A DNA stretch of 64,000 nt from Octopus sinensis (GCF_006345805.1 NW_021832590.1:186001-250000); one strand, 5' to 3'; shown: positions 6,565-59,379, counted from the first letter of the stretch. Made by a program: numbers and translations. Notes: a model not told the origin generated them from the letters alone.

Positions 6565-7405
6565 TCAGTTTTTAAGAGGAAATTGTCTTCTGTATCTTAT
6601 GGTTATTTTAAAATTTTTACTTTTGGAATCGTCGATTGATTTTTCTCTTTCTTGAATCATTTTTTTGTGTTTATAGCGATGATTTTGGAACCATATTTTT
6701 ATTTGAGTTGGAGTCAGGTTGATTTTCCGTGCGAATTCGTCTCTTTCGGTAGCCGACAGATATCTCTGGACTTTAAATCGGTTTTCAAGTTCTGAATTTT
6801 GAGCAGGAGTGAACAAATTGCGTCGCTTTCGTTTGTGTGTTGGTAACTGAGTAGTTGGGTCGTAAAAAAAGGTTTCGTTATTCCCATGACTAGCAAAATC
6901 TACGAAATATACATTTCCAAAACTACCCGCATAAGTTGCCGGGAAGCCCATAAAACCGGTTCTTTGTGGAAGTCTAGCTTCGGAATCTACGCTAGATTAG
7001 TAAAATCATACATGTTCTCCATGGTTCAAAGAAATAGTTTTGAGCGTAAACATTAGTCCCTCGTGGCCCGTAGTATGGGACGTTGATATCATTGTAGTAG
7101 GTATTTCCCATGTTGAACGAAGGGTAATAATTGGATAACAAATTTGCTGGATTTCCTGGATTTGTTGGATATTCTAAGCGGAGCTGGCTTGGAGTGGATT
7201 GTAAGAGCGGAGGGTAGCATAATGCATTTGTCGAACTTTGAAATCCACTTTCAAGGAAATGCGAGTGGTTTGAAGTGTCGTTGTCTTTGTTTGAATCATT
7301 TGGATTTGAGTAGTACATGTTTCGAGGACTTATAGACATTATATCTTGAGACCTCTCGTCAGCCACTCGGAATACTCTGTATTGTTAGACATCGAAATAC
7401 GGCAT
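6565..7405 (-). CDS. NKX2: NK2-class homeobox transcription factor (NK2.1/NK2.2 type); introns 7377-7400 (24 nt) and 6987-7011 (25 nt)
   Basis: Homeodomain [55 protein letters not shown] has His52 and the NK2-diagnostic Tyr54. The two micro-introns join ATG 7405 to ORFs 6992-7366 and 6565-6951 in frame; the start exon is less certain. Confidence 0.88.
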
Positions 7406-9289: not shown

Positions 9290-10050
9290 CGTATTTTATG
9301 TCACCGGCTGGTTACCAAAGATGAACTTGAAGTAATCAAAAATATTCAAATAGATGTTTTTATATTGACCGATTTCAGAAATCTGAAAAAAAGATACAGA
9401 AAATTAGCAGAACAGTTAATTTTCGAGGAGGAAGAGATAGTATACATAAAATACAAAAACCAGAGGTTACGCTTTTTCCCAAAGAAGAAAAGGAACTTAA
9501 ACTAAAAACTATCGAGGTGATCGTTACATAATTATTATAGATTGAACATATGAGGACACATTTTGGAAGAGATAAGTTGCTTTCGATATTGAGAAAGGAA
9601 ATTTATGCAGTAACCCGAGACGAAATTACTGCTGTGATCTCAAAATGCGTTCACTGTCAGGTGCATATGTATTGAATTATTTTTAGTCAAAAAAGTTGAT
9701 GGCGACTAAGCCAACAATCACTCCTATTATTGCAAAAGGGCCTAAAGATCGCTATATTGCAGATTTAGTGGATTTAAAAAGGTATGCTAGCCTTAATAGC
9801 GATAATGGATGGGTATTTTTTTGTATAAATTGTAGTTGGTTGTGGTTATAGACTCATTTTCTAAATTTGCAGTTGTAAAACTTGCCAAGCGGAAATCAGC
9901 GGAGGAAATTAATAGAAGATTAAAGAATATTTTTTACATGATTGGTCATACATTTATTCTACAGACGGTTATTTTCTGTCCAATGGGAAAGATTTTAAGA
10001 ACAAATGTATGAAAACAATTGTAATGATTTGAAAATCATAGACATAAGTG
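9290..10050 (+). mobile_element. Decayed retroviral-like integrase (Ginger2/TDD-like) with spliceosomal micro-introns
   Basis: After removing GT-AG introns 9517-9540, 9661-9686 and 9813-9835 it reads IEHMRTHFGRDK...CVHCQ (HHCC zinc finger), KGPKDRYIADLVDL, WLVVVIDSFSKFAVV and NGKDF. There is a frameshift near 9475, and no RT, RNase H or LTR alongside. Confidence 0.72.
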
Positions 10051-10267: not shown

Positions 10268-11560
10268 CGTGCCGCCTTGAATGATATTGTCAAGCGCGCG
10301 CTCAACGCCGCTGGATTCCCTTCGGTCCTAGAGCCGGTTGGTTTAGACCAGGGGTTCTCAACCTTTTTAGCTCAAGGGCCAAATCGATAATTAAGATTAG
10401 CTTCGCGGGCCGCACAAAAAATATTTTTATATTTTCCAAGCCGGTAACTCGCTTGCAATCCGAAGTGCAGCCACTGCTGATGCGTAATGAGTTTTTTGGA
10501 CTCTTTTTTCTTTTTTTTTAATTTCCATTTCCTTTATAAAGAAATAAAAGTTAAAAAATCTACAAAAGGCGTTGTAACTAAAAAGAAAGTATTATTTGTT
10601 TATTAAGTTTTTGAAATCCGGAATAAGTAAAGTCGAAGAAGTTCGTAAAAGCTGACTCGAGTGATTATCCGTGAGTTTGTTACGATATTTATTTTTATTC
10701 GAATCATTTTACTAAATATTGATTCGCATAAATATGTAGATCCAAACATTGATGTAATATATGCATTGTGGTTATATTTTTGAATTTGTCTTGAGGAATT
10801 AATTCGTAAAAATTAATAATGGACGCATTTTTGAACAATGCCGCCAGTTCTATATCATGTTGTAAATTAATGAGTTCTAGTTGAAACTTTGCAGGCGCAT
10901 CCTTAATTTCCATGCTGAATAGAGTTGCGAATATTTTCATTAAAGGAAGGAATTCTTTAAAATTCTAAAAATTAAATTTATATAAATGTACCCCAAAACG
11001 TGCTTCAAATTGATTAATTAAATCACCAATTATGGATATGTTTAACCTTAAGAATAAACATTATTAAAAAATTAAAAAAGTTAGTTACTCTAGAGGGGCC
11101 GCAAAAAAAATCCTGGGGGCCACATGCGGCCCCGGGGGCCGCATTTGAGAACCGCTGGTTTAGACCGTGGCGACGGAAAACGTCCCGACGGGTCCACGCT
11201 ATTCCCGTTCAAGGGGGGACTCGCTCTCGTTTGGGACGTGACCTGTGTCGACTCGTTTTCCTCGTCATCTCTCATGGACTCTGCCTCCCGCCCTGGCTCA
11301 GCCTCCGCACATGCCGAAACAAAAAAAATAACAAAGTATGCCTCATTGGAGAACACCTGCCTTTTCGTCCCCCTGGCTTTCGAAACGAGCGGGATAATCG
11401 GCCCAAAAGCTCTTGAGTTCCTTTCGGAAATCGGCTTGATGATCTCAAGGAAGAGTCACGAGAGACGTGAGTCTAGTTGGCTTTTTCAGCGCATTTCGCT
11501 CGCGATATTGCGCGGAAACTGCCTATCTATTCGCGCATCCTCTCAATCAAAGAATTAACA
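10268..11560 (+). mobile_element. 3' end of a CRE-clade LINE (restriction-like endonuclease), split by a hAT insertion
   Basis: Removing 10349-11157 and one TSD restores [34 protein letters not shown]...VWDVTCVD...FVPLAFETSG...LFQRISLAILRGN. Confidence 0.85.
10349..11157 (-). mobile_element. Non-autonomous hAT (Buster/Charlie type) deletion derivative
   Basis: TIRs CAGGGGTTCTCAA and CAGCGGTTCTCAA. 8-bp TSD GTTTAGAC (10341-10348 and 11158-11165) fits nnnTAnnn. The transposase C-terminus (FQLELINLQHD) contains a 27-nt intron at 10965-10991. Confidence 0.92.
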
Positions 11561-18660: not shown

Positions 18661-18904
18661 GAAAAAAGAAGTCAAAAGGCCTTTCTTTTGTAGTTTTGTG
18701 GACGGATTTATTGTAGTCTTTTGCTATTTTTCGACGCACGTTTTATAGAATCCAAAATTTCCATTCGATGCATTCGTGGATGAGATCCATCGTTTTCGAA
18801 ATTGATTAATTTTATTGAAACTAAACACAAAAATATTTACCCCTGTATTCACCCAACTCCTGAAATCGACTAAGACTGCACAGCCATGTGAGATATAGTC
18901 GTTT

Positions 18905-23891: not shown

Positions 23892-24224
23892 TAATAAAAT
23901 ATTTTGGTACATTATTTTGAATTTGTCAGTAAAATTAAGGTTGAATTGACCGACTAATTTTTATTTAGATGAAAATTAAATTTTTATGAATAGATGACCA
24001 TCGAATTATTTAATGCTAATAGATAATATGTCACATGCCCTGTTCGTTACCATGCCCCGCTCGTTACCATTGCTCTAAATTTTTAAAATTTCAATTTAAA
24101 ATATTTAAATGATTGAAATATATTTACTTATTAATTTAAAAATTAATAATATTATGGATTTATTTTTCAATGCTTAACCATTATCATTAAAAAACAATAA
24201 ATTAAGCATGCTGTTTTATCTCAT

Positions 24225-24386
24225 GGTTATGGTTAGGGTATAGGTTAGGGTATAGGTTAGGGTTGGGTGGAGAAGGTTAGGTTTGGGTGAAGGTTAGGGT
24301 TTGGGTGAAGGTTAGGGTTTGGGTGAAGGTTAGGGTTTGGGTGAAGGTTAGGGTGAAGGTTCGGGAATTGGTTGGGTTTAGGGTTT
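24225..24386 (+). repeat. Telomere-like G-rich array (8 TTAGGG in 12- and 18-bp units such as GGTTAGGGTTTGGGTGAA)
   Basis: Read directly from the sequence; all G-runs are on the + strand. Confidence 0.95.
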
Positions 24387-24639
24387 GAAAAAATTTAAAG
24401 TAGAATTTTCGAATGGAGATACAAAGATTGTTCACATGAAAAGAATCAAAAAAGGACAAATTTAATTTTTCGTTTTAAACTTCAGATCTATATATGATTT
24501 TAAACTAAAAAACTGGATAAAGTTTGAGTTTTTTATAAGAGATCTACAGATGATTTTAAACCTTTATCTTTTTACATTTCAAAAAATGTTTTAAATAAAA
24601 CTAAAAATTGGTTAGAGTTAATTATAAAACTATCAAATT

Positions 24640-24990
24640 GCAATTCGAGACCGATCTCTATGGACATCCTGGAGTCCAGATGGCGACTCTTTGGACACAT
24701 ATTAAGACTTGACAGCCTCACTCCGCCGAATATCGCGATGGAAAACTACTTTGCCCATTCCAAAGGAGACTTCCGTGGAAGACCCAGGGTCACTCTGGCT
24801 ACCACGCTAAATGAAGATCTAGCTGGAATTAATAAAAACTGAAAAATGGCGATGATCTCGACTCACTCAGGACGATCGCAACTGACCGGAGAGCCTGGAG
24901 ACGCATGACCGGGAGAATTTCAATGGTGGCACAAGGAAAGCTTAATAACTTATGACTTTTCCGAAAGTGCTTTATAATAATAATAATAAA
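24640..24990 (+). mobile_element. RTE LINE 3' fragment with (TAA)n tail
   Basis: PISMDILESRWRLFGHILRLD...FRGRPRVTLATTL, ending in TAATAATAATAATAA. Confidence 0.8.
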
Positions 24991-25219
24991 TTATGTGCTT
25001 TAAAGCGTTTCACACAATTCACATTTTTAAAATATGTTTTAATGTGCTTATCAGTCAAAATGGTTTGTTGTATAAAAATATTATTTTAATTTATTTGTTT
25101 TAAAGCATCTTTTAGTATATCATTAAATTGTACTCTAATTAACCTAATATATAGGTTGAATTTTATTCGTGTGATGATTATTAATTTTTCTAAAAAATTG
25201 AAAAATCATTAATCAATTA

Positions 25220-28023
25220 TGTCGCGAGCGCAGCGAGCAACCACTCAATTTCTAGATCCGATCAATCAAAAAATCTATAAATTGACAAATACCCAGGCTT
25301 GTATTTGGGATTAAATATATTCGATAACAAAAATTAAAATCGATGCCAAAGCAGAATGAGCTTTAAAACCGATTTCATAAATAAAAATAATATTTTAAAA
25401 TTATAATTGATTTTTTAGAATAATGAGAAAAAATCTAAATGCTTCATAATTTATAAAAATGTCAAAACAAGAATCTTCTGAAGGAGCAAGCCTGTCTGCA
25501 CAGTTCATTTTTGATTAGAAGACCTATTTTAGAGATAAAACGAAAAAATAGCAATGAGATTTGTCAAATTATTACCCCCCTCACAACCTAAACAAAATTA
25601 GCGTTCAGTATTCATTTTTTTTTTTTTTTTTTAGGAATAGGAAGTTTTATTGGAAACAGAGAAGGGTTAAAGGTTAGGGGGGAGTTTGTATAATGAAACA
25701 ATAGGACTACCCTATCGACTTCTTCCCAGAAAAAAAAAAAAAAAAAAGAGACCCCCTCAAGTAAATTTTTTTTTTTTTTTTTCTTTTCTACCTCTGCAGG
25801 TACGTCCAGTGACAATTGAGTTGGATTTATAACCACTTATAGCTTTTTCGACAGTTTCACCGACCATGGAGGATTACTTTCAAGCACAGGGGGATTGGAT
25901 CTTCAACTTTTTGGTGGTAAGCAAGCTTCAAAGCGAGCCTGCGAGACTTTTCAAATTTAGTTAAGATGGTGTCCTTCTTTTTAGAGAAGTACCATCCCTC
26001 TTTTCCGTATAGTAGTCCCGGTAGGATCACCGTATTGAAACGTAGAGGAAAGTATCAGGCTCCAAATTTAACTTCCTCAGGCAGAACAGAGCATTAGTTG
26101 CTTTCCTTTTACTTAATTTTGCGTTTTCGAGATAGTTTCCCTTTTCATCGATGAACAAGCCAAGATATTTAATTGAGTTTTGTCGAGGTATGTTCTTGAT
26201 CAGGCACGGTTAATTTATTAAATTTCTGCTTTCTGTGATTCTCAGTAATGCGGACTTCTCACGCGCAATAATGAACATATTTTCATCGCACCATTGCTCC
26301 ACTGTATTCATATATGATATAATCCTTTGTTCGGATAAGGCAGGTTTCGATGAAATGTCAAGGATTACAACATCATCGGCGTATATCAAAATTTCCGTCC
26401 GTGTGTTGACAGGAGACGGCAGATTGCTCATCACAATGTTGAATAATAGAGGACTGAGGACTGATCCTTGAGGGACGCCTCTTTTAAGTTTCAGTTCATC
26501 CGAGTCATAGTTCAGAAAGCTTATCACAGAGCGCCTGTCGCGGAGGAAGTCTTTTAGCCATAGGAATAGTCCTTTGTCTATGTGACACTTCGCCAGATGT
26601 CTAAGGGACCGAGGTGCCAAACCATATCAAAGGCTTTTGAGATGTCTAGAGACACAATTGTCAGACACTCTTTGAAATCCAGAGCCTTTACAATCGACGA
26701 ATTGAGTGTATAAAGACAGTCAGCACAGGAACGACCCCTCCGAAAGCCCCACTGCACGTCTTTGAGATAACCATTTCTCTCGACGTGTTCAGAGAGTCGT
26801 TCAAACATTACCCTTTCCATTATTCGACTGATGGTAGGAATTAGGCTTATAGGCCTATAACTTGTCGCCAAGTAACCAGGTTTTCCAGGCTTCCGTATCA
26901 TCCTTACCTCCGTCAGTTCCATGAAGAAGGGACGTATCCCAAGCTCACACTGCGGGAGAAGAGACATCCCAAATATTCGTAAGTTGCTTGGGAGCTTCCT
27001 TGAACATGCGCATGGTTATCTTGTCCTTTCCCGGAGCGTTATTTTTGGAGTATCTAACTGCATTTTCCACGTCTTTGCACGTTATAGATTCCGAGCACAT
27101 TGGTAATGAGCTAAGATTGTCTTCCAACTCTTTTTCCATATCAAACAAAGCTGAATCAGATAGATTTGTATCCGGATTGACTTCTTGTATTCTTTTGAGA
27201 CTATCAGCAAATATGTTCGGGATTTCTTCATGAGATGCAGGGGATCCATCTTGTTTTAGCAGTTTAGGTATAGATTTCTCAGACGTCGAGGTTAATTTCG
27301 AGTAGACCTTCCAAAAATTGGACTTCCTTTATGTAGCTTTTTGCACTCAGTATTCCATTTTTATCCTTCGCCACCTTCGCCGATTTTCTTATTTCTTCCG
27401 TAATGGTAAAGATTTCACTTTCCAAAACGGACCGGTCACGAAAATCTGCGCAGCGCCGGAGTTTGTTCCTTAGACATTGTTTTTTCCTTAGTAGGATTTC
27501 AACATTCATGTTTGGCATGTGAGTTTTCCTATTGTTTGAGACGATTTTTGTAGAATATGTTTCCAGATAAGACTTTATGTATCCAATAAGGGAATTGCTA
27601 GACTTCTCGAGGTCCTCAGATGAAATTTTCGTCAAGTTAGGAGCGAAATTGCTCAGATAAAGTGTAAAACATTTTCGGTAGTGTTCCCAGTTTATAGTCG
27701 AGAGGTTATATCGTATAAAAGTTGGTTTACCCTTTAAAGGTCCAAGGTTGAGTTTGTATAAATTGGTAGATGGTCACTTCCAATATCATTTAAGGTGTAC
27801 GGTTGTTCCATAAATGATTGATTCAGTATTCATTGATTTTACTTTTTCTATTAAGGTCTACTTATAATTATTTTATGGGATTCAATGGAAAACTTAAGTT
27901 ATTTCATTTTAATTTTAAATCATGTTAAAATTTTAAATAATTTAATAAATATATTTGTTGATGACAGGCTTGTTAGCTGTCAAATGTGCGCGTCGCGCTC
28001 GCGTGCTCGCTGCGCTCGCGACA
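25220..28023. mobile_element. Second non-autonomous TGT...ACA element (20-bp perfect TIR, 5-bp TSD), nested in the first
   Basis: TGTCGCGAGCGCAGCGAGCA at 25220 and TGCTCGCTGCGCTCGCGACA ending at 28023. AATTA on both sides. Confidence 0.88.
25615..27821 (-). mobile_element. 5'-truncated I/Jockey-like LINE with poly(A) tail and 11-bp TSD
   Basis: RT motifs YRPISL, QWGFRRGRS, LDISKAFDMVWH, GVPQGSVLSPLL and IYADD. AATAAA lies 13 nt before an A18 tail (T-run 25615-25632). TSD TTCAGTATTCA at 25604-25614 and 27822-27832. Confidence 0.9.
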
Positions 28024-28739
28024 AATTATTCTCAGAAATAATTCGGAGGTAACGAGTGGGGCATAGTAATCCCTGAGGCATGTGACATAATATTATCTTT
28101 AATAAAAAAATATAAAAAGGATATGATTATAATACGCTTGCGTTATGGTGGTTTCTTTTTTGATGTATATTAAAGAATAAAATATGCTTTTTTGTCAGTT
28201 TGTTTGTTAATCTTTTGATTCATTTTTAAATAGTCATCTTTTATGTTTGTAAATTCGTTAATAATCGAAAAAGTCTATTCAGTGCGATTTTTGCCATTCT
28301 TTCTTTAATATTTCGTGTATCAAGCTATCAAATGAACAACTTTCCCGCTTTATTCGTTGGATGTTGTTCCTTTTCTCTTTCTTATATCAACGATGGTCTC
28401 TCCTTCCGCTTGGACAATACTTCAGATCTATTTTTGTTGCATTCTGAATTTATCCTTAAATTGATTTATGATTATCCTGCTTCTTGCTACATTCCTATCC
28501 GAATCCTAAAATTTCGGTGGCACTGAATTTATCTTTTGTAATCGCATCCGTCATTTACGATTCTTCCATTTTTAATTGGAATTGTTTGTTCATTTTTCCA
28601 ACTTTCACGGTGGCTTCTCCCGTTCGCTGCCCTGGTTCTACCGGTTCTCTGTTTCCATACGAAAAGAAGCACGATGGTCGTAAATCTCTCGTATCTTGAC
28701 GATTGTACCTCTTTTAAGAGACCTAGCTACTCTAATTTC

Positions 28740-32880: not shown

Positions 32881-33649
32881 AATAATTATTAATTACCATA
32901 AAAAATTATTACTCATTGCGGAAAGGTTTTAGCGAGGCTTTTTTGCATAGAATACAACAAATAAAAGATTATCTCAATTCTGATCGCGTTCCTTCATCTT
33001 TTAAAGATGTTGATTAGAAAAAAGATATAGATTTGAAAAATTTCTTTTTATATGTTCATAAGTCAGAAATACCGTCAGGACATAGCCAAAAATCGAAATG
33101 ATTGGATTGGAAGATCAAAAAGAAATTATTAATGCGCTTAAAATTGCTTATGATAACATTTTTTGTGGCGGGGAACAAAATGATCAAAAGACGAAAATGG
33201 AAATACGACAAAGATTGCTAATTGCGCTCAGATTGTGTGATTATAAGAACTACCTAAGATGCATGTCGACCAAAGCTGCCTCTATATCAGAAGTTTCCAA
33301 GCTTTTCTTTACACGTCTCCTTAGAAAAATGTACAATCTTGCGCCTCCCTTTTTATTCCGTAATATAATACAATTATTAATTTTACAATTTATTAATAAG
33401 TTAAAATCCAAATCAAGATATAAATTAATTAAACTTCTAGTCGCTCTATCATCTATTTGCAAAGTGATTCAGATAGGCAAGCCCTCCTTTTTCCCTTCGA
33501 GGTACTGACAGGCAGGGGCGATGTTAAAGACATACTAATTTGGTGATAAATCTCGTTTATTCGCTTGTCAAGTTCAAACGTTCTTTTCCATGGTTCAACC
33601 CTGTTTCTAAAAGAAACAATCATGCTCTCAAGAGTCTCAATTATTAATT

Positions 33650-34260
33650 TATCAAAAACAATTTTTTTAAACAAAAAGTTAGTAAGATAATTTTTTTCTA
33701 TCTTTTCGCAAAGTTTTTGAAATCTTTGTGTCATTGAAGAGATTGCTACTCTTAGCTCATTAGTCACTACTAAACGAGTTCGATATTTAGATTTCATTGC
33801 AGCTAGTGCAGAAAATCCAGCTTCACATAAATATGAGATAGAAAATGGCAATAAAACTTTCATTGCTTTATTCGACAAAATTTCATATTCCGTACTTACA
33901 TTCGATGCTAGTAAAGCATTTGAAGAGACAGAAACAAGTTTTTTTAACGATTTCGTTTGGTTATCAAACTCTTTTAATTTTCTTTTAAAAAATTATTCGG
34001 ACTTATGGACATATTTAGAATGTATCGTTTCAAAATGTCTTCTTAATTTGCATGGCCTCATACTATCTGCTGCAAGTGTTTTGAGGCAAAGCAAGCAGAG
34101 GAGTTTTTCCAAGGAATCAACAATGATACGTGTGAATCCTAACAATAAGTAACATGGACAGTATTTTCTTGTCTTTGGAGTGGTATTGATTGTATTCCAA
34201 TCATTTTGACTATTTAACCTTTGTCAATTTTAACAGCCTGGTTTCTGACATTTGAATATT
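33650..34260 (-). mobile_element. hAT Buster (ZBED5/SCAND3-like) internally deleted relic
   Basis: LCLLCLKTLAADSMRPCKLRRHFETIH is joined to EYEILSNKAMKVLLPFSISYLCEAGFSAL..MKSKYRTRL. Confidence 0.8.
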
Positions 34261-34479: not shown

Positions 34480-34800
34480 CAGAGATGCCCGTTCTTTACA
34501 TTTAATGTTTCATGGAGACATCAACAAAATTGAATTATCGTTAAAAGTGATTTATAAAAAAAACATTTCAGAGTGCGATGTATGTAAGTTTTCTCTTCCA
34601 CTTAAACCGTGGATGAAACTAATCATGTTTTCGCTTCTGCTCAGAATGATCGGTTTCAAATTGACCTTATTGAGCTGAAAAGGTTTGAAAACGTTAACGG
34701 AAGATAAAAATGGATTCTATCCATGATTGGCGTCTATAGCCGTTTTTATGAATATAATTATCTTAGTTTTGATTTTGCTAGGCCACAAATAAATAATTTA
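34480..34800 (+). mobile_element. Second decayed Ginger/KRBA2-like integrase fragment
   Basis: H-GDINK...ISECDVCK...ASAQNDRFQIDLIEL...KWILSMI, frameshifted. Confidence 0.55.
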
Positions 34801-37760: not shown

Positions 37761-38927
37761 CACAGTTTACAGAAAGTTGAAATTGAAAAAATGAGAAAAT
37801 ATGACCCTTTATCTAATAAGTTGGAATTAATTTATCATGTAAGAGTGAAAATGCAGTCTTTGGTTACGGACGAAAGTTTATTTGTGATCATAATATGATA
37901 TGATGAATACGCTTTTATAATGATGATGAGTTTTCCGTCGTTTTGCAGAGGACTATTAGTAGTGCATCAAGATCGTCCCCGTCCTTCAGTTCTTTACCAG
38001 CCCTCTTTAGGTCTCTATCCAGCGTACCCGGGAGAATATTTCTTGGTCGCCCACGGAAACGATGACCCCCAGCTTCGAAATAGTCCTCCATAGCGGCGTT
38101 TGCCGGTGCATCCAAATCCATTTTTAGAATATGTCCAAACAGCCTCCATCTGCATTCGGTAATTTCGAGCGAGATTGGTTTGCTTGATGTTCTGGCATAA
38201 ACTGTTCTGCTACTCAACCTTGAATGCCACTTGGAGGCTAGAGTACGTCGGAGGTGATCTCTATGGAAAGAGTTTAGGTTGTCATTGTCTGTAGCGGAAA
38301 GTCCCCAAGTTCCGGCGTTATATAGGAGTATTGGCTTCACTAGTGAATTGTATAGTCGTATCCGTGTTTTTGTGCTGAGTCCTTTGCTTTTTAGGCAATT
38401 TTCCTTTAAGCTGCGTAGTGCACTGTTTGCATGTGTTTTCCGCATAATCACGTCTTTGTTCGTCTCACAATAGAGATCCGAGTTTCTTTACTTTTCTCCA
38501 ATGTTCGTCCAGCTTAGACTTCTGTCTTGCTAGCTCAGTAAATTCTGTTTTCTCCACATTTACATTGAGGAACCACTCAGCAAGTCTATTTGGCATCACC
38601 TCCAATAGGCTTTCCAGAGCGTCCTTGACTGAAGAAATAAAATCCACGTCATCCGCGTATGCCACCACATTGATCTTTCCTTCATAATATGGTTTTAGTT
38701 CTCTCAATGCAGCTTCCAGATATATGACAAACAGTATAGGAGATAACGGATCCCCTTGAGGTGTTCCAGATGTTGTTTTAAATGGTTTAGAGCACTTGTC
38801 TCGTACCCTGACCGATAGATAGGTTTCTGATAAAAGTGCCCTGATCATCCGAATAGAAGATTCATCAAGGAATCCTGCAAGGACTTGCATTAATTTTTGA
38901 CGATTAATCGAGTCAAAAGCTCTTGAC

Positions 38928-41900
38928 TAGGGCCAACATTTTTTTAACCTTAAAAATTGAAAAATTTAACCTTAAAAAGTTAACTTTTTAACCTATAAAC
39001 CAAAATTTTTAACCTTAAAATTAAAAAAATTTAACTTTATTTATTCTCAGGTTAAACCTGTAAAGTATAAATAAGAAACAATAAAATACTTTAAAGACTA
39101 TTCATGACATAATTTTCCAAATTTTGTGTAGCAAAGTTTCTGTTTGACCTCATAAAACTCCTAAATTGCGAAAAGCATCGTTCGATAGATGCCGAGGATG
39201 GTTGACAGTTTTGAAGTAACGAATAATCTTCCGGAGAGATATTTTTATTATCCATATTAATAATTTTAGTCATATCGCTCTCTAAAAATCTCTTCTCTAA
39301 ATTTTTTGATCCCTGCTTCATCCTTCCCGAAGTCAAGTGTACATAACGTCGAATATGCAAATTCTATTGTACATTCGTTACTTTCAAGTTGTAATATTTT
39401 CTCTATGAGATTAATTACTATATGAAAAACCTAGAATATGTGAATAGTTATGCGAAATTGCACATAAGCTTTTGACTAGTTTTTCACTTATCAATGCATT
39501 TTTGGTGGCAGTCACTAGTATTCCTTCGTCCTCAATCAAATCAAAAATGTTAATCACTGAGATTAAATTTCTTGAATAAAAAGATGCAGCCTTTAACCAG
39601 GTGCCCCATCTCGTCAACACAACTTTCGAGGAATTCCAATTTCGTAAAACAACAATTTTCGCTTGTGGTTCTTCCTGACAGAAGCTTGCACGCTAGCTAT
39701 CACATCATCAACTTCTGGATAAGATTTTCTGACCTCCATTGAACAATTATGCAAAATATGGGTGACGCAATTAACATTAAAAAGATTAGAATATAAATTT
39801 TTTAAAATTTTCCCGGCTAAATCATTAATTAATTAAAACAATACCGGATGTCATATACCGTGCAGCATCAAAAATGAGAAGCATAAAATTATCCCGTTCA
39901 ACCATAAGGTTTCGAATGGAATCATCAACGATCTGTGCTATGATATTTTTTGTTGGCGCGGATTCGATTGGCTTGAATGAGACCAAATAAGTAATTGTAG
40001 GGAGTTTTATTGATCCCATCAAAACGGCGACATAACGTTTGTTTCGAATTTGAGTTTCATCGGTTATTGTAAAAATTTTTTGTTCTCTAGAAAATAAACT
40101 TTGATGGAATACTTGAATTTGTCGATCCTATGTACAGTCCGACCTCTAAATGGGGCACTAAGTGCCTCAAATCAGAGGTTTCCCCAAAAAAGAGGTTTTT
40201 CAAAAAGTTCAATAAATAAAGAAAAAGAACATTATTTTTTAAAATAATCAGTTAATTTTTCTCCATATTTATATTTATTTTTAATTCCTAACGACACTTT
40301 CTTTCTGAATTCATAAAAATCATGAAGAGAATCTGGAATCAAATCAAAGATGTTTGTCTCTAAGTTTTCCATCAAACTTAAAATTTGTGATATTGATGGT
40401 TCGCAGCTTATATTCTTATAGATATTTGGATCATTATCTTCTATTTCATTAAAACATTCATCAATAACATTATTAAATATTTCTTCAGATGATTCATTTA
40501 TGCAACTCGAGTCTGATGGAGATTGTCGAAAAACCTTTTGCCAGCAGTTATAAATAATATCCGCAGATACATTATTCCAAGCATCTGAGATTATTGTTAC
40601 CACTTGCCGCAAATTTAATTTGGATAAAGACTCTATAAACAAATCCTGGTCGTCTTGAAAACATAAAAAATCAATTAGACAATTCAAATAATTATCCTTG
40701 AAATTTTTAATGATTCCAGCATCCAAAATGGTTGAAGTATTGGTGTCGTATTTTTTGGTAAAAATAAAAAATCAACGTTGCTAAATGTCGATATTTTGTG
40801 GCAAGCAGCGTTATCTGATAACATTAAGATTTTTATTTTTTGAATAATCATTTTTTCATTAATTTTTTTGAGCCAGGATATAAAAATGTCTCTTGTCATC
40901 CACGCATTTTTGGACGAAGAGCATAAAATTCGATAAAAAGAGAAGTTTCGTTACAATTAAAAATGTTCTCCTTTCCATATTGTTCAACTTTGATATTTAA
41001 TTTTGATAAAAAATTCAGAATTATCGCATGATCAGCAGATGCGGATTCGCCTGACAATGTTCGGAATTTTAATTCATGCCTCTGCTTGAATTTTTCTAAC
41101 CATCCATTTGAGGCTTTAAACTTGTTTAAGCCCATTCTCGAAGAAACAGTTTAGGGAAATTTTTTTTAAAAGAGTTCCAGAAACTGGAACATTCTGATCC
41201 CTTAGACGCTGAAAAATATCAAGGACTTTTCATCAAATCCGTTTTTATTTTCACTTAATGATGAGGAAAGAAATCCTTTTTTGATAAATGGAATAATATT
41301 CTTTTTATACGAAAAATAGTTACCTTGCTAGTATTGTACATTATGGATAATCTCCTCTCAGAATGTTCTTTCTTTAAAAGATGATCAGCAATCTTCAACT
41401 TGGTTTCATATTCAAAGGCATTACACAAGAAATTTGAAATGAAACGTGTCTTAAAATATTTATTTTTTAAATTGGTATAATTAATTTTATTTAATAAAAA
41501 ATCAATGCCCCAAATAGAGATGTTAAAATTAATTGATTTTTTATAATTTGGTTAAAAAATTTATAATGCCCCAAAACAGAGTTTTCCCCAAAAAAGAGGT
41601 GCCCCACCCCTGGAGGTGCGCCCCAATTAGAGGTCGGACTGTATTCATTTGCAATATATTTTGCACAATTCCTTGCTTGTGATTGCGAAGGAAGGGAAAT
41701 TTTGTTGCTTTCGAAGAGATCAACAAATAAAGGCATTGATAATTTATTTAGCGGAATGTCACATTTCAGAAAAGCCTTAGTCACCCTCAAATTCCAGTTT
41801 CCAATTTCAGATTCATCTAATTTTTGTTGGCTAAATGTAGTCAAACGATCTATATATTATCGAAAAATCTATACCAACGAAAGTCTTATGTTTCTTTGAT

Positions 41901-45003: not shown

Positions 45004-45950
45004 CTATTCTTCCGATAACCCAGGCTCTGTATTCCGCAAGTCGGGCTCAACTGTTGTCTTTTGTGTTATTGCCTTTGCCAAATCATCAATCACTGCTGTT
45101 TGACGATCTCGCTCTTTCTTGGAAACCGTCTGTCTCAAAGTGTTCATTATATGTCTCGTCTTGTCGAAGTACACCGAAGAAAGAGAACTCCTCATCGAAT
45201 TCTCCTGTGCCTCGATCATACTTCCCATATTCCTGATATGCCCCTGAATATCCGACAATGTCATTTGCTGATTTGTCTGTATTCACAAGTAAAACCAAAT
45301 AATAACCTCCTTAATAAGACTTCCACCCAAATTTATGTCAATATCCTTCTCAGAATGCATCCACAACATTATCGAGGTCACCAATTTGTACTTGCACTTT
45401 CCTCCCGACGTCTATAATTATACGTAGAAAGTGATTACATTTGCCTCAAAAATATGAATGGAATCCCACGCGGAATTCACTTTGCTCGAATTTTCTCCCA
45501 TTTTCTTGATAAGGACAGCTCCCCCGAAACTGGCAATATTTTTGGAGTCCATGTTCCATAGGTAAACGGAAGAAAGAGCTCCTCCGTAGTACATATCAGT
45601 GTAGGCCAGGAAAACTTCGTTGAATTTAATTTCCAATTCTCTCAGTTCATCAGACGGGAGTACTCCGTCGAAATTGTCGGTGTAGGTGTTAGTCCAAGGA
45701 GAACGGTAGGAGTCCCCGTCACGGTTATACTCGCAGATGAGAAAGTCCTTTCCACTACTGTCCTGTTTTATTGGCAGTGGTCGGTCGACTAAAGCAAGGA
45801 GAGATTCGCAGATCTCTGGTTTGAGTTTGATGATGTCACTCATAATTTTGTTTATGTTTTGTGGAGGAAGTCGACGACATAGGTCAAGAGCACAGTCTAT
45901 TTCTTTGTCGGTCTATTCAGAAAATTAATTGATCACATCAGACAAACCAT
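45004..45950 (-). CDS. CAPZB: F-actin capping protein beta subunit; introns of 35, 27 and 30 nt
   Basis: M|TDKEIDCALDLCRRLPPQ...EYNRDGDSYRSPW...SSVYLW...WDSIH...INLGGSL. First intron 45913-45947. Confidence 0.96.
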
Positions 45951-53512: not shown

Positions 53513-54055
53513 ATGAAGTCGTTTTTATTTTCTTCCTTACTTAAGTATGAGTGGGAGGAAGTAGTGGCTGGCTTCTATCGACGGTATCCCAACCCGTATA
53601 GTGGTCATGTCCTCAGCGAGGATATTGTGGAACAGAAGGTAGAGGATGGCAAACTAAGAATTACAAAATTAATAACAAAAGTCGGCACAATGCCTAAATG
53701 GATTTCTTTCTTGATGAAGGGGTCTCACAAAACACTTGTTCTTGAGAAATCAACAGTGGACGTCATTTCTCGTACTTTAAACACATCTACTCACAACATT
53801 GGAACTCTCACAAAATTGGCTTCAGTCGAAGAGAACTGTTCGTATTTTGAGGGAGATGATGGTACCACAGTAGTCCGGAAAAAGTTGTCCGTTTCTCCCA
53901 AACTGAAGGCTCTGACTTCTCCCATTGTCCATTTTGTTGTCGACAAGTATAAAGAGAGTTCTCATAGGGCACTTTTGGGTATCCAACATGTTTTGGAACG
54001 CGTTAATTCTGACAATATTTACAGAGCCGCACGTTTTTCTAAACTTATCCATTGA
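53513..54055 (+). CDS. PRELID1: PRELI/Ups1-family mitochondrial lipid-transfer protein, intronless
   Basis: MKSF...WEEVVAGFYRRYPNPYSGHVLSED...KLITK..MPKW. Confidence 0.88.
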   Translation: MKSFLFSSLLKYEWEEVVAGFYRRYPNPYSGHVLSEDIVEQKVEDGKLRITKLITKVGTMPKWISFLMKGSHKTLVLEKSTVDVISRTLNTSTHNIGTLTKLASVEENCSYFEGDDGTTVVRKKLSVSPKLKALTSPIVHFVVDKYKESSHRALLGIQHVLERVNSDNIYRAARFSKLIH

Positions 54056-57149: not shown

Positions 57150-59379
57150 ATGGATACAACTAACACTTTATTTATTCAAAATCTGCCATACAGTACAAAG
57201 AGTGAGGATCTAAAAAAAATATTCGAACCACATGGGAATCTCCTCTCCTGTTTTGTCGTATTCGATAAAGGTTAACAATTCAGTCAACAATTTTTAGAAA
57301 ACAAGCTTTCGAAAGGAATTGGATATGTAAAGTACTCAAACAGCGCTGAATGTCAATTAGCCATCAAAAAAGTAAAAAAAATCGACGATCGAAGAATAAC
57401 AATAACTCAAGCACAAAACAAACCAAAGAAAAAAAGTTTTAAATTAATCTCTCACAAAAATAGATTCTTTTTTGGAAACTTTACGAGTCCGTCCTCAGTT
57501 GGCCAGGAAATGCCTTATTTTGACCGGAATTTCAGTCTCAAATTATTCCCTTGGCACTGGAAAAGTCGTCGTTTCTCTGGAAAGCAGTGGATTTGCTTAA
57601 TTTCATTTCCTAACAAAGCAACCGCCTTGAAGCACGTACCCTTATATAAAAAATGTAACACTTGGTTTTTTGTATAGTAGTCGCTGATACAGTTGAATTG
57701 TATTATAAACATAAGCTGTACGGGAATATAAGATCTTTAAAGACTTTTAGACTGATTGTTCATAATTTGTCATTTCAGGTAGCTCATTTTGTCAATTTAG
57801 GCCTCTCATCGTGATTTGTTTAAAGTTTTTAAAAAATGTGGGGAGATTGTGGAGATTTCAATCCCTTCAGATGGTCAGAATTGTCTATTAATAGTTTCAG
57901 GGGTCAAAAAATCAGCAGGATTTGGGTTTGTGCAATTTACTGATTCAGAATCTGCAGAATTGGCCATAAAAAATATAAACGGCACTAAAATTAAAGGTTT
58001 TTTGACAAATAATTTTCAAAGGGAGAATCGTGGCTGTGGATTACTGTCTTTCCAGAGACCAGTACAAAGCACAGCAAACCGAAAAGGAGGAGGTTCATAT
58101 GACAGAAGAAGAAGGCTCAGTTTCCGCGGAAACCAACGAAGTCCCGGACACGGAGGATGGCAGGACTGTGTTTTTGAAGAATGTGGGATTCGACGTGTTG
58201 AGCGAGGATTTAAACAAGTCTTTAATTGGTCAAGTTGGGAAGACTTTATATACACGTTGTGTCCTTAGAGGTACTCATTGGATGGTATTATTGGCAGATG
58301 GCAGATGTAAAGGCACTGCATTTGTAAAGTTCAGAAGAGTGAAGGATGCTGAGAGGTGTTTGGAGCTGTCTCGGGTAGGTTTATAGTTGGAGTTGTAGAG
58401 TGGTCATTTACTGCACGAAGACAGACAGTTGGAAGCCGATTGGGCAGTGGAGAGGGATAAAATTGAGGACAAGTCAAAGGAGTCGAAAGTGGATAAATTG
58501 GATAAGCGGAATCTCTTTTTAGTCCGAGAAGGAAGTAGATATGGTGTTATAAGACGACAGTGATTAGAATGGGGACTCAGTTGGCCAAGGATATTCCTGC
58601 AAGTGATCTTAAGAAGAGACAGAAGGCAATTCAGTTGTAAAATAGGTTTAGTTGGAGGTGGCGAGGAGAACTAAGCTGAGAGACGATAAATACTTTGTGT
58701 CCCCAACTCGACTGACATTCCACAACCTGGGCAATAAGATAACAGACAAGGGATTGAAGGATATCATCCTGGAGAGAGTGGATGGGTGTAGGAAGACGCA
58801 GATCACCGAGGTATTGGTTATTAAGGAGGTTGTAGTGTCGGGTTATGAAGGACAAAGTGGGTGGAATCTCGTTGGGATACGCCTTTGTGGAGTTTAATGA
58901 GCATTCGGTCGCATTGGCAGTCCTCAGGGAGTTCAATAATAACCCTGATTGCTTTTCTGGAAGGGTACTGTCAACGGATTGAGTTTTAGAGAGCAATTGT
59001 GCAGTTTGCTGTTGAAAATAGACAAGTGTTGTTAGGGAAAGAGCGTCGATTAGCTAAATCTCGTGGGGAGAAAGTGGATGATAAGATTCTGGCCAATAAA
59101 ATGAAAGAAAAGATACTCGAGTCGAGTATTCCAGCCAAGCAGTTGATATGTGAAAATAACGGTGGAGAATATTAATTTATTGACAGGCAAGTTTGTGACT
59201 GGACTTCCTCGTCATTTGGGTCCGAAGATAAGACATTCGTTTAGGGACAGGAAGAGAATGAGGAAGAAGATGCTGAGAAGTTCTGCCATGAAGACCAATA
59301 TCATTCGCAGGAGGGTAAAAATGTGTTTTTTATTTGATAGGTTAATTGTAAAGTGGGTTCTAAGCAGTCGAAAGAGTAG
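57150..59379 (+). CDS. RBM28: RNA-binding protein 28 / Nop4 (multi-RRM nucleolar protein)
   Basis: [91 protein letters not shown] and IVQFAVEN. The 3' exon is approximate. Confidence 0.9.

What the first reader, a model, noticed from the sequence alone, without database searches (positions are those of the whole stretch)
24029..28087. Nested TGT...ACA elements with 5-bp TSDs: a candidate Ginger-type integrase/MITE system
Seen: the outer element (24029-28087; about 40-bp TIR built from a doublet of CATGCCCYGYTCGTTAC; TSD TAATA) contains an inner element with an unrelated TIR (25220-28023; 20 bp; TSD AATTA), which contains a LINE with its own TSD. With insertions removed they are about 0.9 and 0.6 kb and non-coding. 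The inner element landed about 65 bp from the outer right end. Established: TG..CA ends and 4-6-bp TSDs are hallmarks of retroviral-type integrases, and Ginger DNA transposons use such an enzyme with TGT-starting TIRs. Inference: these are non-autonomous partners of an intron-containing integrase like those at 9290-10050 and 34480-34800.
Basis: partly seen in the sequence, partly recalled or inferred. Interest (0 to 1): 0.7.

Follow-up and report, generated by a model that had tools for sequence, protein, structure and literature searches.

The report
Nested TGT…ACA transposons in octopus
Two unrelated non-coding mobile elements with TGT…ACA ends and 5-bp target duplications sit one inside the other in the Octopus sinensis genome; this is an ordinary transposon nest, and a single locus cannot decide whether they are integrase-type DNA transposons or solo LTRs.

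Summary
The outer element (24029-28087) has TSD TAATA, an 11/11 terminal inverted repeat, and a 17-bp subterminal motif at both ends. The inner element (25220-28023) has a perfect 20-bp TIR and TSD AATTA. Inside it lies a decayed minus-strand LINE (25617-27821) with a 13-bp TSD. Apart from LINE reverse transcriptase, nothing in the region is coding.

The window is Octopus sinensis, contig VCDQ01009216.1:186001-250000. Neither element has a second copy in the 64-kb window, in another 20.5 kb of the same genome, or in the public collections I could scan. Family size, an autonomous partner and a TSD logo therefore stay untested.

By elimination, TIRs plus TGTNR ends plus a 5-bp TSD fit only the Ginger2/TDD type among described DNA transposons. 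Animal Ginger2 has so far been reported with 4-bp TSDs. Solo LTRs fit the ends and the TSD equally well, but not the long TIRs.

The proposed partner integrase (mapped here at 9469-9967) is a truncated, frameshifted remnant, not an intron-bearing gene. It shares no termini with the two elements. Its relatives are stand-alone integrase genes, so a Ginger2-like lineage probably does exist in octopus.

Verdict: a real but ordinary TE nest, with the interpretation partly supported. Interest 0.25.

The parts
24024..24028 (.). Left copy of the outer element's 5-bp target-site duplication (TAATA)
   Evidence: Read directly; identical to 28088-28092
24029..28087 (+). Outer non-coding TGT…ACA element (about 0.89 kb of its own sequence plus nested insertions)
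24029..24068 (+). Outer left terminal inverted repeat: TGTCACATGCC, then two tandem copies of a 17-bp motif (first copy degenerate)
24225..24384 (.). TTAGGG-like minisatellite (18-bp unit, about 6 copies) inside the outer element
   Evidence: TRF
24640..24989 (+). 5'-truncated LINE 3' fragment ending in (ATA)5; start approximate. Could be an insertion into the outer element or captured sequence
   Evidence: 53% aa identity to the C-terminus of the LINE ORF at 37918-38451; TRF
25215..25219 (.). Left copy of the inner element's 5-bp TSD (AATTA)
   Evidence: identical to 28024-28028
25220..28023 (+). Inner non-coding TGT…ACA element (about 0.59 kb of its own sequence plus the LINE)
25220..25239 (+). 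Inner left TIR, TGTCGCGAGCGCAGCGAGCA
   Evidence: 20/20 with 28004-28023 on the minus strand; 0 expected by chance
25604..25616 (.). Left copy of the LINE's 13-bp TSD (TTCAGTATTCATT)
25617..27821 (-). 5'-truncated LINE with an A-tail and a composite 3' end. The reverse-transcriptase reading frame is broken by at least two frameshifts
   Evidence: Pfam RVT_1 in two frames (E 8.7e-18 and 3.3e-13); break counts; homopolymer runs
27822..27834 (.). Right copy of the LINE's 13-bp TSD
28004..28023 (-). Inner right TIR; preceded by a CGCGCTCG x3 micro-repeat (27994-28020)
28024..28028 (.). Right copy of the inner TSD (AATTA)
28048..28087 (-). Outer right TIR: TGTCACATGCC, then a decayed motif copy, then one intact 17-bp motif copy
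28088..28092 (.). Right copy of the outer TSD (TAATA)
9469..9967 (+). Context only, not shown to belong: truncated, frameshifted remnant of a stand-alone HHCC-DDE integrase gene (two frameshifts, one in-frame stop; last third of the core and the C-terminus missing)
   Evidence: Pfam zf-H2C2 E 2.4e-5; tblastn with octopus and other relatives at 47-64% identity; break counts

Best explanation
These are two unrelated families of non-autonomous cut-and-paste DNA transposons. Both are moved in trans by a retroviral-integrase-like DDE transposase of the Ginger2/TDD type, and they have been nested by successive insertions.

Inferred mechanism. The enzyme binds the terminal inverted repeats: a 20-bp GC-rich repeat in the inner element, and an 11-bp tip plus 17-bp subterminal motif copies in the outer. 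It exposes the 3'-OH at the terminal CA of each end. It then joins both ends to target DNA with a 5-bp stagger. Gap repair leaves the 5-bp duplications (TAATA, AATTA), both in AT-rich DNA.

Order of events, shown by the nesting. The outer element inserted first. The inner element then inserted 64 bp from the outer right end. A LINE then retrotransposed into the inner element, leaving a 13-bp TSD.

What is shown: the structures, the TSDs, the absence of coding capacity, and the order of events.
What is inferred: the class of enzyme, from TGTNR ends plus a 5-bp TSD plus true TIRs, by exclusion of the other described superfamilies.
What is not shown: any family of copies, or any autonomous partner.
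For: - Exact TIRs well beyond chance: 20/20 (inner), and 11/11 plus a 16/17 motif at the same offset from both ends (outer).
- Both ends read TGTCA / TGTCG, which fits the TGTNR pattern reported for Ginger1, Ginger2 and Gypsy (PMC2836005).
- Both TSDs are exactly 5 bp. Shifting the element boundaries does not give another TSD length (read).
- Among described TIR superfamilies, 5 bp is characteristic only of Transib and of Ginger2/TDD. Kojima 2023 gives '4 or 5 bp for Ginger2' (PMC10045372). Transib-like ends are excluded.
- There is no coding capacity apart from the LINE.
- GC-rich TIRs on an AT-rich body, and repeated subterminal motifs, are typical of transposase-binding ends. They are longer than I recall for the inverted repeats at LTR tips (my knowledge: usually under 15-17 bp and imperfect).
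- A stand-alone integrase lineage exists in this genome. The remnant at 9469-9967 and O. sinensis LOC115227152 (P0243, L020) have an HHCC finger and a DDE core. Their relatives in L021-L023 have no RT, RNase H or protease in the 1-3.5 kb upstream frames scanned.
- A curated O. vulgaris repeat library lists one Ginger2 family, one Ginger1 family and 123 unclassified TIR families (PMC13282606 supplement).
Against: - Each element is known from one copy only. There is no second copy in the window, in L020, or in the metagenome and viral collections.
- No autonomous element with these ends was found.
- The animal Ginger2 families described so far give 4-bp TSDs with a TATA preference, and their TIRs are 45-180 bp. 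Here the TSDs are 5 bp and not TATA, and the TIRs are 20 and about 40 bp.
- TG…CA ends with a 5-bp TSD are just as typical of solo LTRs.
- LTR sequence (0.77% of the O. vulgaris genome) is far more abundant than annotated Ginger sequence (about 0.05%).
Confidence: 0.5

Rival explanations
1. Both elements are solo LTRs of two different LTR retrotransposon families (Ty3-like or other). Each full-length element was integrated by its own integrase with a 5-bp stagger. Recombination between its two LTRs then removed the internal part, leaving one LTR with TGT…ACA ends and the TSD.
For: - TGTNR…ACA ends and 5-bp TSDs are the classic LTR signature. The literature gives 3-6 bp for LTR elements, mostly 5.
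- Sizes of 0.6 and 0.9 kb are typical LTR lengths.
- Both elements are non-coding.
- O. vulgaris has 141 LTR families covering 0.77% of the genome, about 16 times the annotated Ginger sequence.
- Nesting of LTR elements in one another is common (my knowledge).
Against: - A perfect 20-bp inverted repeat, and a 40-bp structured end with the same 17-bp motif at the same offset at both ends, are much longer than the inverted tips of LTRs known to me.
- The TIRs are GC-rich islands on AT-rich bodies, which is typical of MITE-like elements.
- No gag, protease, RNase H or LTR-type RT signal was seen among the 146 reading frames of at least 76 aa scanned from the 64-kb window. The five RVT_1 hits there are in LINE-type frames.
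- There is no second, direct copy of either element nearby.
Confidence: 0.33
2. They are non-autonomous TIR transposons of some other, possibly undescribed, superfamily whose enzyme is not integrase-like. The TGT ends would then be coincidental or convergent.
For: - O. vulgaris has 123 unclassified TIR families, and 15% of its genome is 'unknown' repeat.
- The enzyme class is inferred only from the ends and the TSD length.
Against: - Two unrelated families share TGTC…GACA ends and the same 5-bp TSD, which points to one enzyme type with the integrase signature.
- The described alternatives fail: Transib (5 bp, but the ends differ, and re-defining the ends destroys the TSD), GingerRoot/IS3EU (6 bp, TA…TA), Polinton (6 bp; AG…TC termini as that paper writes them) and Ginger1 (CCGG).
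Confidence: 0.12
3. The inverted ends and flanking repeats are chance matches in AT-rich, repeat-rich DNA.
For: The TSDs are AT-only in a 35% GC genome, and each element is single-copy here.
Against: - 0 of 100 shuffles give even one match to either end pattern.
- The combined TIR-plus-TSD scan finds these two pairs against 0.24-1.3 low-complexity hits per shuffled window.
- The three nested layers each have exact TSDs.
Confidence: 0.01

Closest known systems
[quoted passage not shown]
   Same: TIR-bounded; TGTNR…ACA termini; short AT-rich TSD; non-autonomous derivatives of a few hundred bp exist. A 5-bp TSD is reported for TDD-4/5, and Kojima 2023 lists 4 or 5 bp for Ginger2. Octopus carries a stand-alone HHCC-DDE integrase lineage, and O. 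vulgaris has an annotated Ginger2 family.
   Different: All animal Ginger2 families described by Bao et al. give 4-bp TSDs with a TATA / RTATAY preference, and their TIRs are 45-180 bp. Here the TSDs are 5 bp (TAATA, AATTA) and the TIRs are 20 and about 40 bp. No autonomous copy with these ends is known.
Solo LTRs of Ty3-like (Gypsy) or BEL-type LTR retrotransposons
   Same: TGT…ACA ends, 4-6-bp (often 5-bp) TSD, length of 0.1 to a few kb, non-coding.
   Different: LTR tips are usually short, imperfect inverted repeats. Here there is a 20/20 repeat, and an 11/11 tip plus a shared 17-bp subterminal motif. No internal retrotransposon sequence and no partner LTR are in reach.
Ginger1
   Same: TGTNR termini and TIRs of 40-270 bp.
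   Different: Ginger1 TSDs are 4 bp and specific for CCGG or CCGT. Here the TSDs are 5 bp and AT-only.
GingerRoot / IS3EU, and Polinton/Maverick
   Same: An integrase-related DDE enzyme and short TSDs.
   Different: 6-bp TSDs; TA…TA termini (GingerRoot/IS3EU) or AG…TC termini as PMC6839031 writes them (Polinton); TIRs of 100 bp or more.
Transib
   Same: 5-bp TSD.
   Different: Transib ends begin with CAC (my knowledge). Here the inverted repeat runs out to TGT, and moving the boundary inward to the CAC abolishes the flanking direct repeat.

Membership tests
Ginger2/TDD | Termini follow TGTNR … (inverted) | tested here: met
   TGTCA… and TGTCG… at both ends of both elements; pattern as defined in PMC2836005
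Ginger2/TDD | Terminal inverted repeats (45-297 bp in described families) | tested here: inconclusive
   True TIRs are present but short: 20 bp perfect (inner), about 40 bp imperfect (outer)
Ginger2/TDD | TSD of 4 bp (animals, TATA preference) or 5 bp (TDD-4/5) | tested here: inconclusive
   Exactly 5 bp twice (TAATA, AATTA). This fits '4 or 5 bp' but not the 4-bp TATA pattern of animal families
Ginger2/TDD | Autonomous copies with the same termini encode an HHCC-DDE integrase without RT | not testable with these tools
   No further copy of either end in the window, L020-L024, or the metagenome and viral collections. The host genome cannot be searched by DNA here
Ginger1 | 4-bp TSD specific for CCGG / CCGT | tested here: not met
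   TSDs are 5 bp and AT-only (definition)
MITE (as a structural class) | Short, non-coding, TIRs, TSD | tested here: met
   0.59 and 0.89 kb net; no Pfam domain apart from the nested LINE; TIRs and TSDs. The outer element is at the upper size limit
MITE (as a structural class) | Many near-identical copies in the genome | not testable with these tools
   Single copy in the 64-kb window and in L020 (20.5 kb), about 84 kb of octopus DNA in all
Solo LTR of an LTR retrotransposon | TG…CA ends and a 4-6-bp TSD | tested here: met
Solo LTR of an LTR retrotransposon | The same sequence occurs elsewhere as a direct pair flanking gag-pol, with a PBS and PPT adjacent | not testable with these tools
   No direct second copy in the window. 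No gag, protease or RNase H domains among the top 25 of the 40 Pfam families hit by window frames of at least 76 aa
Solo LTR of an LTR retrotransposon | Only short inverted repeats at the tips | tested here: not met
   20/20, and 11/11 plus 16/17 motif repeats. The 'short' criterion is from my own knowledge and is not a strict rule
Transib | 5-bp TSD with ends beginning CAC… | tested here: not met
   The TSD length fits, but the inverted repeat extends to TGT, and no flanking repeat exists if the ends are set at the CAC
GingerRoot / IS3EU | 6-bp TSD, TA…TA termini, TIRs of 100-150 bp | tested here: not met

The most novel reading that the evidence does not exclude
Octopus may carry a Ginger2/TDD-like integrase transposon lineage that makes 5-bp rather than 4-bp target duplications. 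That length is so far reported only for Dictyostelium TDD-4/5. This lineage would work with short (20-40 bp) TIRs and would have spawned at least two unrelated non-autonomous families. Relatives of its integrase in a microsporidian assembly and in other AT-rich contigs would hint at horizontal spread.
Probability: 0.3. Interest if true: 0.45.

Novelty: new member of a known kind. Interest (0 to 1): 0.25.

Why it matters
If the two elements are integrase-mobilised DNA transposons, they add a molluscan branch with a different target stagger to a small and poorly sampled superfamily. That superfamily sits at the junction between cut-and-paste transposons and LTR retroelements. They would also give names to part of the large 'unclassified TIR' and 'unknown' repeat fraction of octopus genomes. 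If they are solo LTRs, the locus is routine. Either way it is a clean, datable three-layer nest, useful as a worked example for repeat annotation of cephalopod genomes, and nothing more.

Tried and rejected
1. Other copies inside the window. Pattern searches with up to 3 mismatches, sensitive blastn of each element piece against the window and a custom TIR+TSD scan found none.

2. Public collections.
- The inner 20-mer hit 17 metagenome contigs, mostly 57-75% GC and a few at 43-49%, with no similarity beyond the 20-mer. I take these as chance.
- One phage contig holds the 20-mer twice. It encodes a family A DNA polymerase, and I take the match as coincidence.
- The outer pattern was absent from the viral contigs.
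- The bacterial genome collection was not scanned, as it is not relevant.

3. Exact-protein look-ups of small ORFs inside the elements, meant to pull other copies out of Logan/NCBI assemblies. All five were negative (and the host ORFs in 27, 29, 30).

4. The integrase route.
- The word-indexed search with the 58-aa core piece found nothing, and PDB gave nothing.
- The exhaustive HMMER search gave 117 WD40 false positives and one true relative, P0163.
- The relatives of P0163 and their loci L020-L023 were fetched.
- No TGT…ACA termini could be defined for any of them, and neither TIR occurs there.

5. Subterminal k-mer sharing between the two ends. It is significant only for the outer 17-bp motif and uninformative for the inner element.

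6. Rfam and ARAGORN on the region found nothing. The ending of the outer motif, which resembles a tRNA 3' end, remains an unexplained resemblance.

7. A full-text search for the TIR strings found only unrelated primers.

8. Rejected readings: Transib, Ginger1, GingerRoot/IS3EU, Polinton (see the membership table) and chance.
Full report
**1. What is there**

The outer element runs from 24029 to 28087.
- It starts with TGTCACATGCC and ends with the exact reverse complement, and it is flanked by TAATA on both sides (24024-24028 and 28088-28092).
- A 17-bp motif, ATGCCCCNCTCGTTACC, lies at 24052-24068. In inverted orientation it lies at the same distance from the other end (28048-28064), matching 16 of 17.
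- A degenerate extra copy lies at 24035-24051 (TRF period 17). The matching extra copy on the right is largely decayed.

The inner element runs from 25220 to 28023.
- It has a perfect 20-bp TIR, TGTCGCGAGCGCAGCGAGCA, and is flanked by AATTA (25215-25219 and 28024-28028).
- Its right end is 64 bp from the outer right end.

Neither end pattern occurs anywhere else in the window, and none of 100 shuffles gives a single match. A window-wide scan for TGT…ACA inverted ends with 4-6-bp flanking repeats recovers only these two pairs, apart from two AT-only low-complexity pairs. Shuffled windows give 0.24-1.3 hits.

Shifting the boundaries does not give another TSD length. The outer inverted repeat can be extended outward by one complementary base, but the flanks then no longer repeat.

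**2. The nested layers**

A LINE occupies 25617-27821 on the minus strand.
- Its A-tail abuts a 13-bp TSD, TTCAGTATTCATT (25604-25616 and 27822-27834).
- Pfam finds RVT_1 in two frames (E 8.7e-18 and 3.3e-13) and nothing else in any of the six frames of 24029-28087.
- The reverse-transcriptase frame is broken by at least two frameshifts.

- A 5'-truncated LINE 3' fragment lies on the + strand (about 24640-24989, ending in (ATA)5). Its 60-aa ORF is 53% identical to the C-terminus of another LINE ORF in the window.
- A TTAGGG-like minisatellite lies at 24225-24384.

After subtracting these, the inner element is about 0.59 kb and the outer about 0.89 kb, both non-coding. The order of events follows from the nesting: outer, then inner, then LINE.

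**3. Where it comes from**

A window ORF (45418-45843, minus strand) is 100% identical to 'F-actin-capping protein subunit beta-like [Octopus sinensis]'. The locus fetched for that protein is 100% identical to window 35418-58138. This places the window at GCA_006345805.1 contig VCDQ01009216.1:186001-250000.

The window is a typical octopus TE landscape. It holds LINE RT, Tc1/pogo and hAT fragments, alongside host exons.

**4. Are the elements families?**

What I could reach was negative:
- no second copy in the window;
- none in a further 20.5 kb of the same assembly (L020);
- none in three loci from other organisms;
- no meaningful match in metagenome or viral contigs. The 17 metagenome hits to the inner 20-mer are mostly in 57-75% GC contigs and share nothing beyond the 20-mer. 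One phage contig holds the 20-mer twice, beside a family A polymerase gene;
- no exact match to small ORFs of the elements in the assembly index;
- no paper containing the TIR strings.

'Single copy' here means single copy in about 84 kb of a 2.7-Gb genome, which says nothing either way.

**5. What kind of element?**

The literature sets the frame.
- Ginger1 has TGTNR ends, 40-270-bp TIRs and CCGG-specific 4-bp TSDs.
- Ginger2 has TGTNR ends and 45-180-bp TIRs in animals, with 4-bp TSDs in an RTATAY target. Only Dictyostelium TDD-4/5 give 5 bp (PMC2836005).
- The Bombyx and Rhodnius Ginger2 MITEs also give 4-bp TATA TSDs (PMC3845634).
- Kojima 2023 summarises TSD lengths as 4 bp for Ginger1, 4 or 5 for Ginger2, 6 for Polinton and 3-6 for LTR elements (PMC10045372).
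- GingerRoot/IS3EU give 6 bp with TA…TA ends (PMC6839031).

Among described TIR superfamilies, then, only Ginger2/TDD combines TGT ends with a 5-bp TSD. Transib shares the 5 bp but not the ends.

Both elements read TGTCA or TGTCG, which fits TGTNR. Two unrelated sequences share the same tip and the same stagger, and that argues for one enzyme type.

The same tip and stagger are also the textbook signature of LTRs, so two solo LTRs would look identical in these respects.

What speaks against LTRs is the length and quality of the inverted repeats. One is 20/20. The other is 11/11 plus a shared 17-bp motif at the same offset from both ends. From my own knowledge, the inverted repeats at LTR tips are rarely longer than about 15 bp and are usually imperfect. 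The GC-rich ends on AT-rich bodies also argue against LTRs.

What speaks for LTRs is abundance. In the curated O. vulgaris annotation, LTR elements cover 0.77% of the genome (141 families). Ginger1 and Ginger2 together cover about 0.05% (one family each). There are also 123 unclassified TIR families, and 15% of the genome is unknown repeat, where non-autonomous elements of this kind would hide (PMC13282606 supplement).

I weigh these as follows:

| Reading | Probability |
|---|---|
| Integrase-type non-autonomous DNA transposons | about 0.5 |
| Solo LTRs | about 0.33 |
| Another TIR superfamily | about 0.12 |
| Chance | about 0.01 |

**6. The proposed partner integrase**

Region 9290-10050 does contain an integrase remnant.
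- Pfam finds the H2C2 zinc finger (E 2.4e-5).
- tblastn with relatives maps it to 9469-9967 at 47-64% identity.
- It is three abutting pieces in three frames, meaning two frameshifts and one in-frame stop. It covers only residues 16-134 of a 212-residue octopus relative.
- It is therefore a truncated pseudogene, and the abutting or overlapping pieces leave no room for introns.

The signal at 34480-34800 is marginal: 27% identity, E about 1e-3, and nothing in Pfam. A third scrap lies at 18662-18816 on the minus strand.

The only true hit of an exhaustive HMMER search was P0163.
- Its relatives are 16 short rve-only proteins. They include O. sinensis LOC115227152 and a protein from a Dictyocoela muelleri (microsporidian) assembly.
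- In the three non-octopus loci, the frames scanned 1-3.5 kb upstream of the integrase hold no RT, RNase H or protease.
- In one of them (L021) the reading frame opens just upstream of the integrase N-terminus.

The lineage therefore looks like a stand-alone integrase gene, which is the Ginger2/TDD architecture. This is an inference, not a phylogenetic placement.

I could not define termini for any of these copies. None carries either TIR. The link between the two elements and these integrase remnants is unsupported. What can be said is that an enzyme of the right kind has lived in this genome.

**7. Verdict**

- 'Ginger-type' should read 'Ginger2/TDD-like, with an atypical 5-bp stagger for an animal'.
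- The solo-LTR alternative is not excluded.
- The named integrase copies are dead fragments with no demonstrable connection to the two elements.

For a specialist this is a tidy example of nested insertions in one of the most repeat-rich mollusc genomes, not a surprise. Its only real interest is the possibility of a 5-bp-TSD Ginger2 lineage in cephalopods. A single genome-wide similarity search would settle that question.

Noticed in passing
window 1-64000: The window is Octopus sinensis GCA_006345805.1 contig VCDQ01009216.1:186001-250000 (+). Locus L024 is 100% identical to window 35418-58138.
   Followed up: yes
window 25617-25790: The 3' end of the nested LINE has three homopolymer runs: an A-run, about 18 nt, a T-run, about 97 nt containing AATAAA, and a final A-run next to the TSD. 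It looks like a 3' transduction or a template switch during retrotransposition.
   Followed up: no
window 24640-24989: A second, 5'-truncated LINE 3' fragment (+ strand, ending in (ATA)5) lies inside the outer element. It is 53% identical at protein level to the C-terminus of the LINE ORF at 37918-38451. With one copy it is undecided whether it is an insertion or captured sequence.
   Followed up: partly
window 24035-24068 and 28048-28064: The 17-bp subterminal motif of the outer element, read inward, ends in …GTTACCA, which is reminiscent of a tRNA 3' end. ARAGORN and Rfam find no tRNA-like structure. This is probably chance.
   Followed up: partly
window 45418-45843 (-): This exon belongs to an annotated 'F-actin-capping protein subunit beta-like' gene. 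It is only 57% identical to the next closest capping-protein beta in the database, so it is a fast-evolving paralogue. Other host-like ORFs in the window are a homeobox exon (6565-6951, -), PRELI (53513-54055, +) and an RRM (57816-58268, +).
   Followed up: partly
window 33283-34227 and 10347-11162; L020 6208-8171 and 15696-16426: Two repeat families are shared at 89-98% identity between the window and another O. sinensis contig. One is a hAT-like element with a Spin-doc-type zinc finger. In both loci it lies next to a weak integrase remnant.
   Followed up: partly
L021 (Dictyocoela muelleri SDVU01000220.1), L022, L023 (Logan contigs, 24-28% GC): The closest full-length-looking relatives of the octopus stand-alone integrase sit in a microsporidian assembly and in very AT-rich contigs of unknown origin. 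This could be horizontal spread of a Ginger2-like element, or host contamination.
   Followed up: partly
L018 314-333 (+) and L019 1496-1515 (-), contig IMGVR_UViG_3300028388_004364: A phage contig contains the inner element's 20-mer twice in inverted orientation, about 5 kb apart. One copy lies at the start of an ORF upstream of a family A DNA polymerase gene. There is no similarity beyond the 20-mer, so I judge it a coincidence of a semi-repetitive GC-rich word.
   Followed up: partly
window 40133-40156 and 41620-41643; L020 12560-12631 and 13389-13404: TACAGTC(C/G)GACCTC… inverted repeats of a Tc1/mariner-type short element occur in both octopus loci. In the window the TIR is 24 nt and 96% complementary, around a 1.5-kb body.
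   Followed up: no
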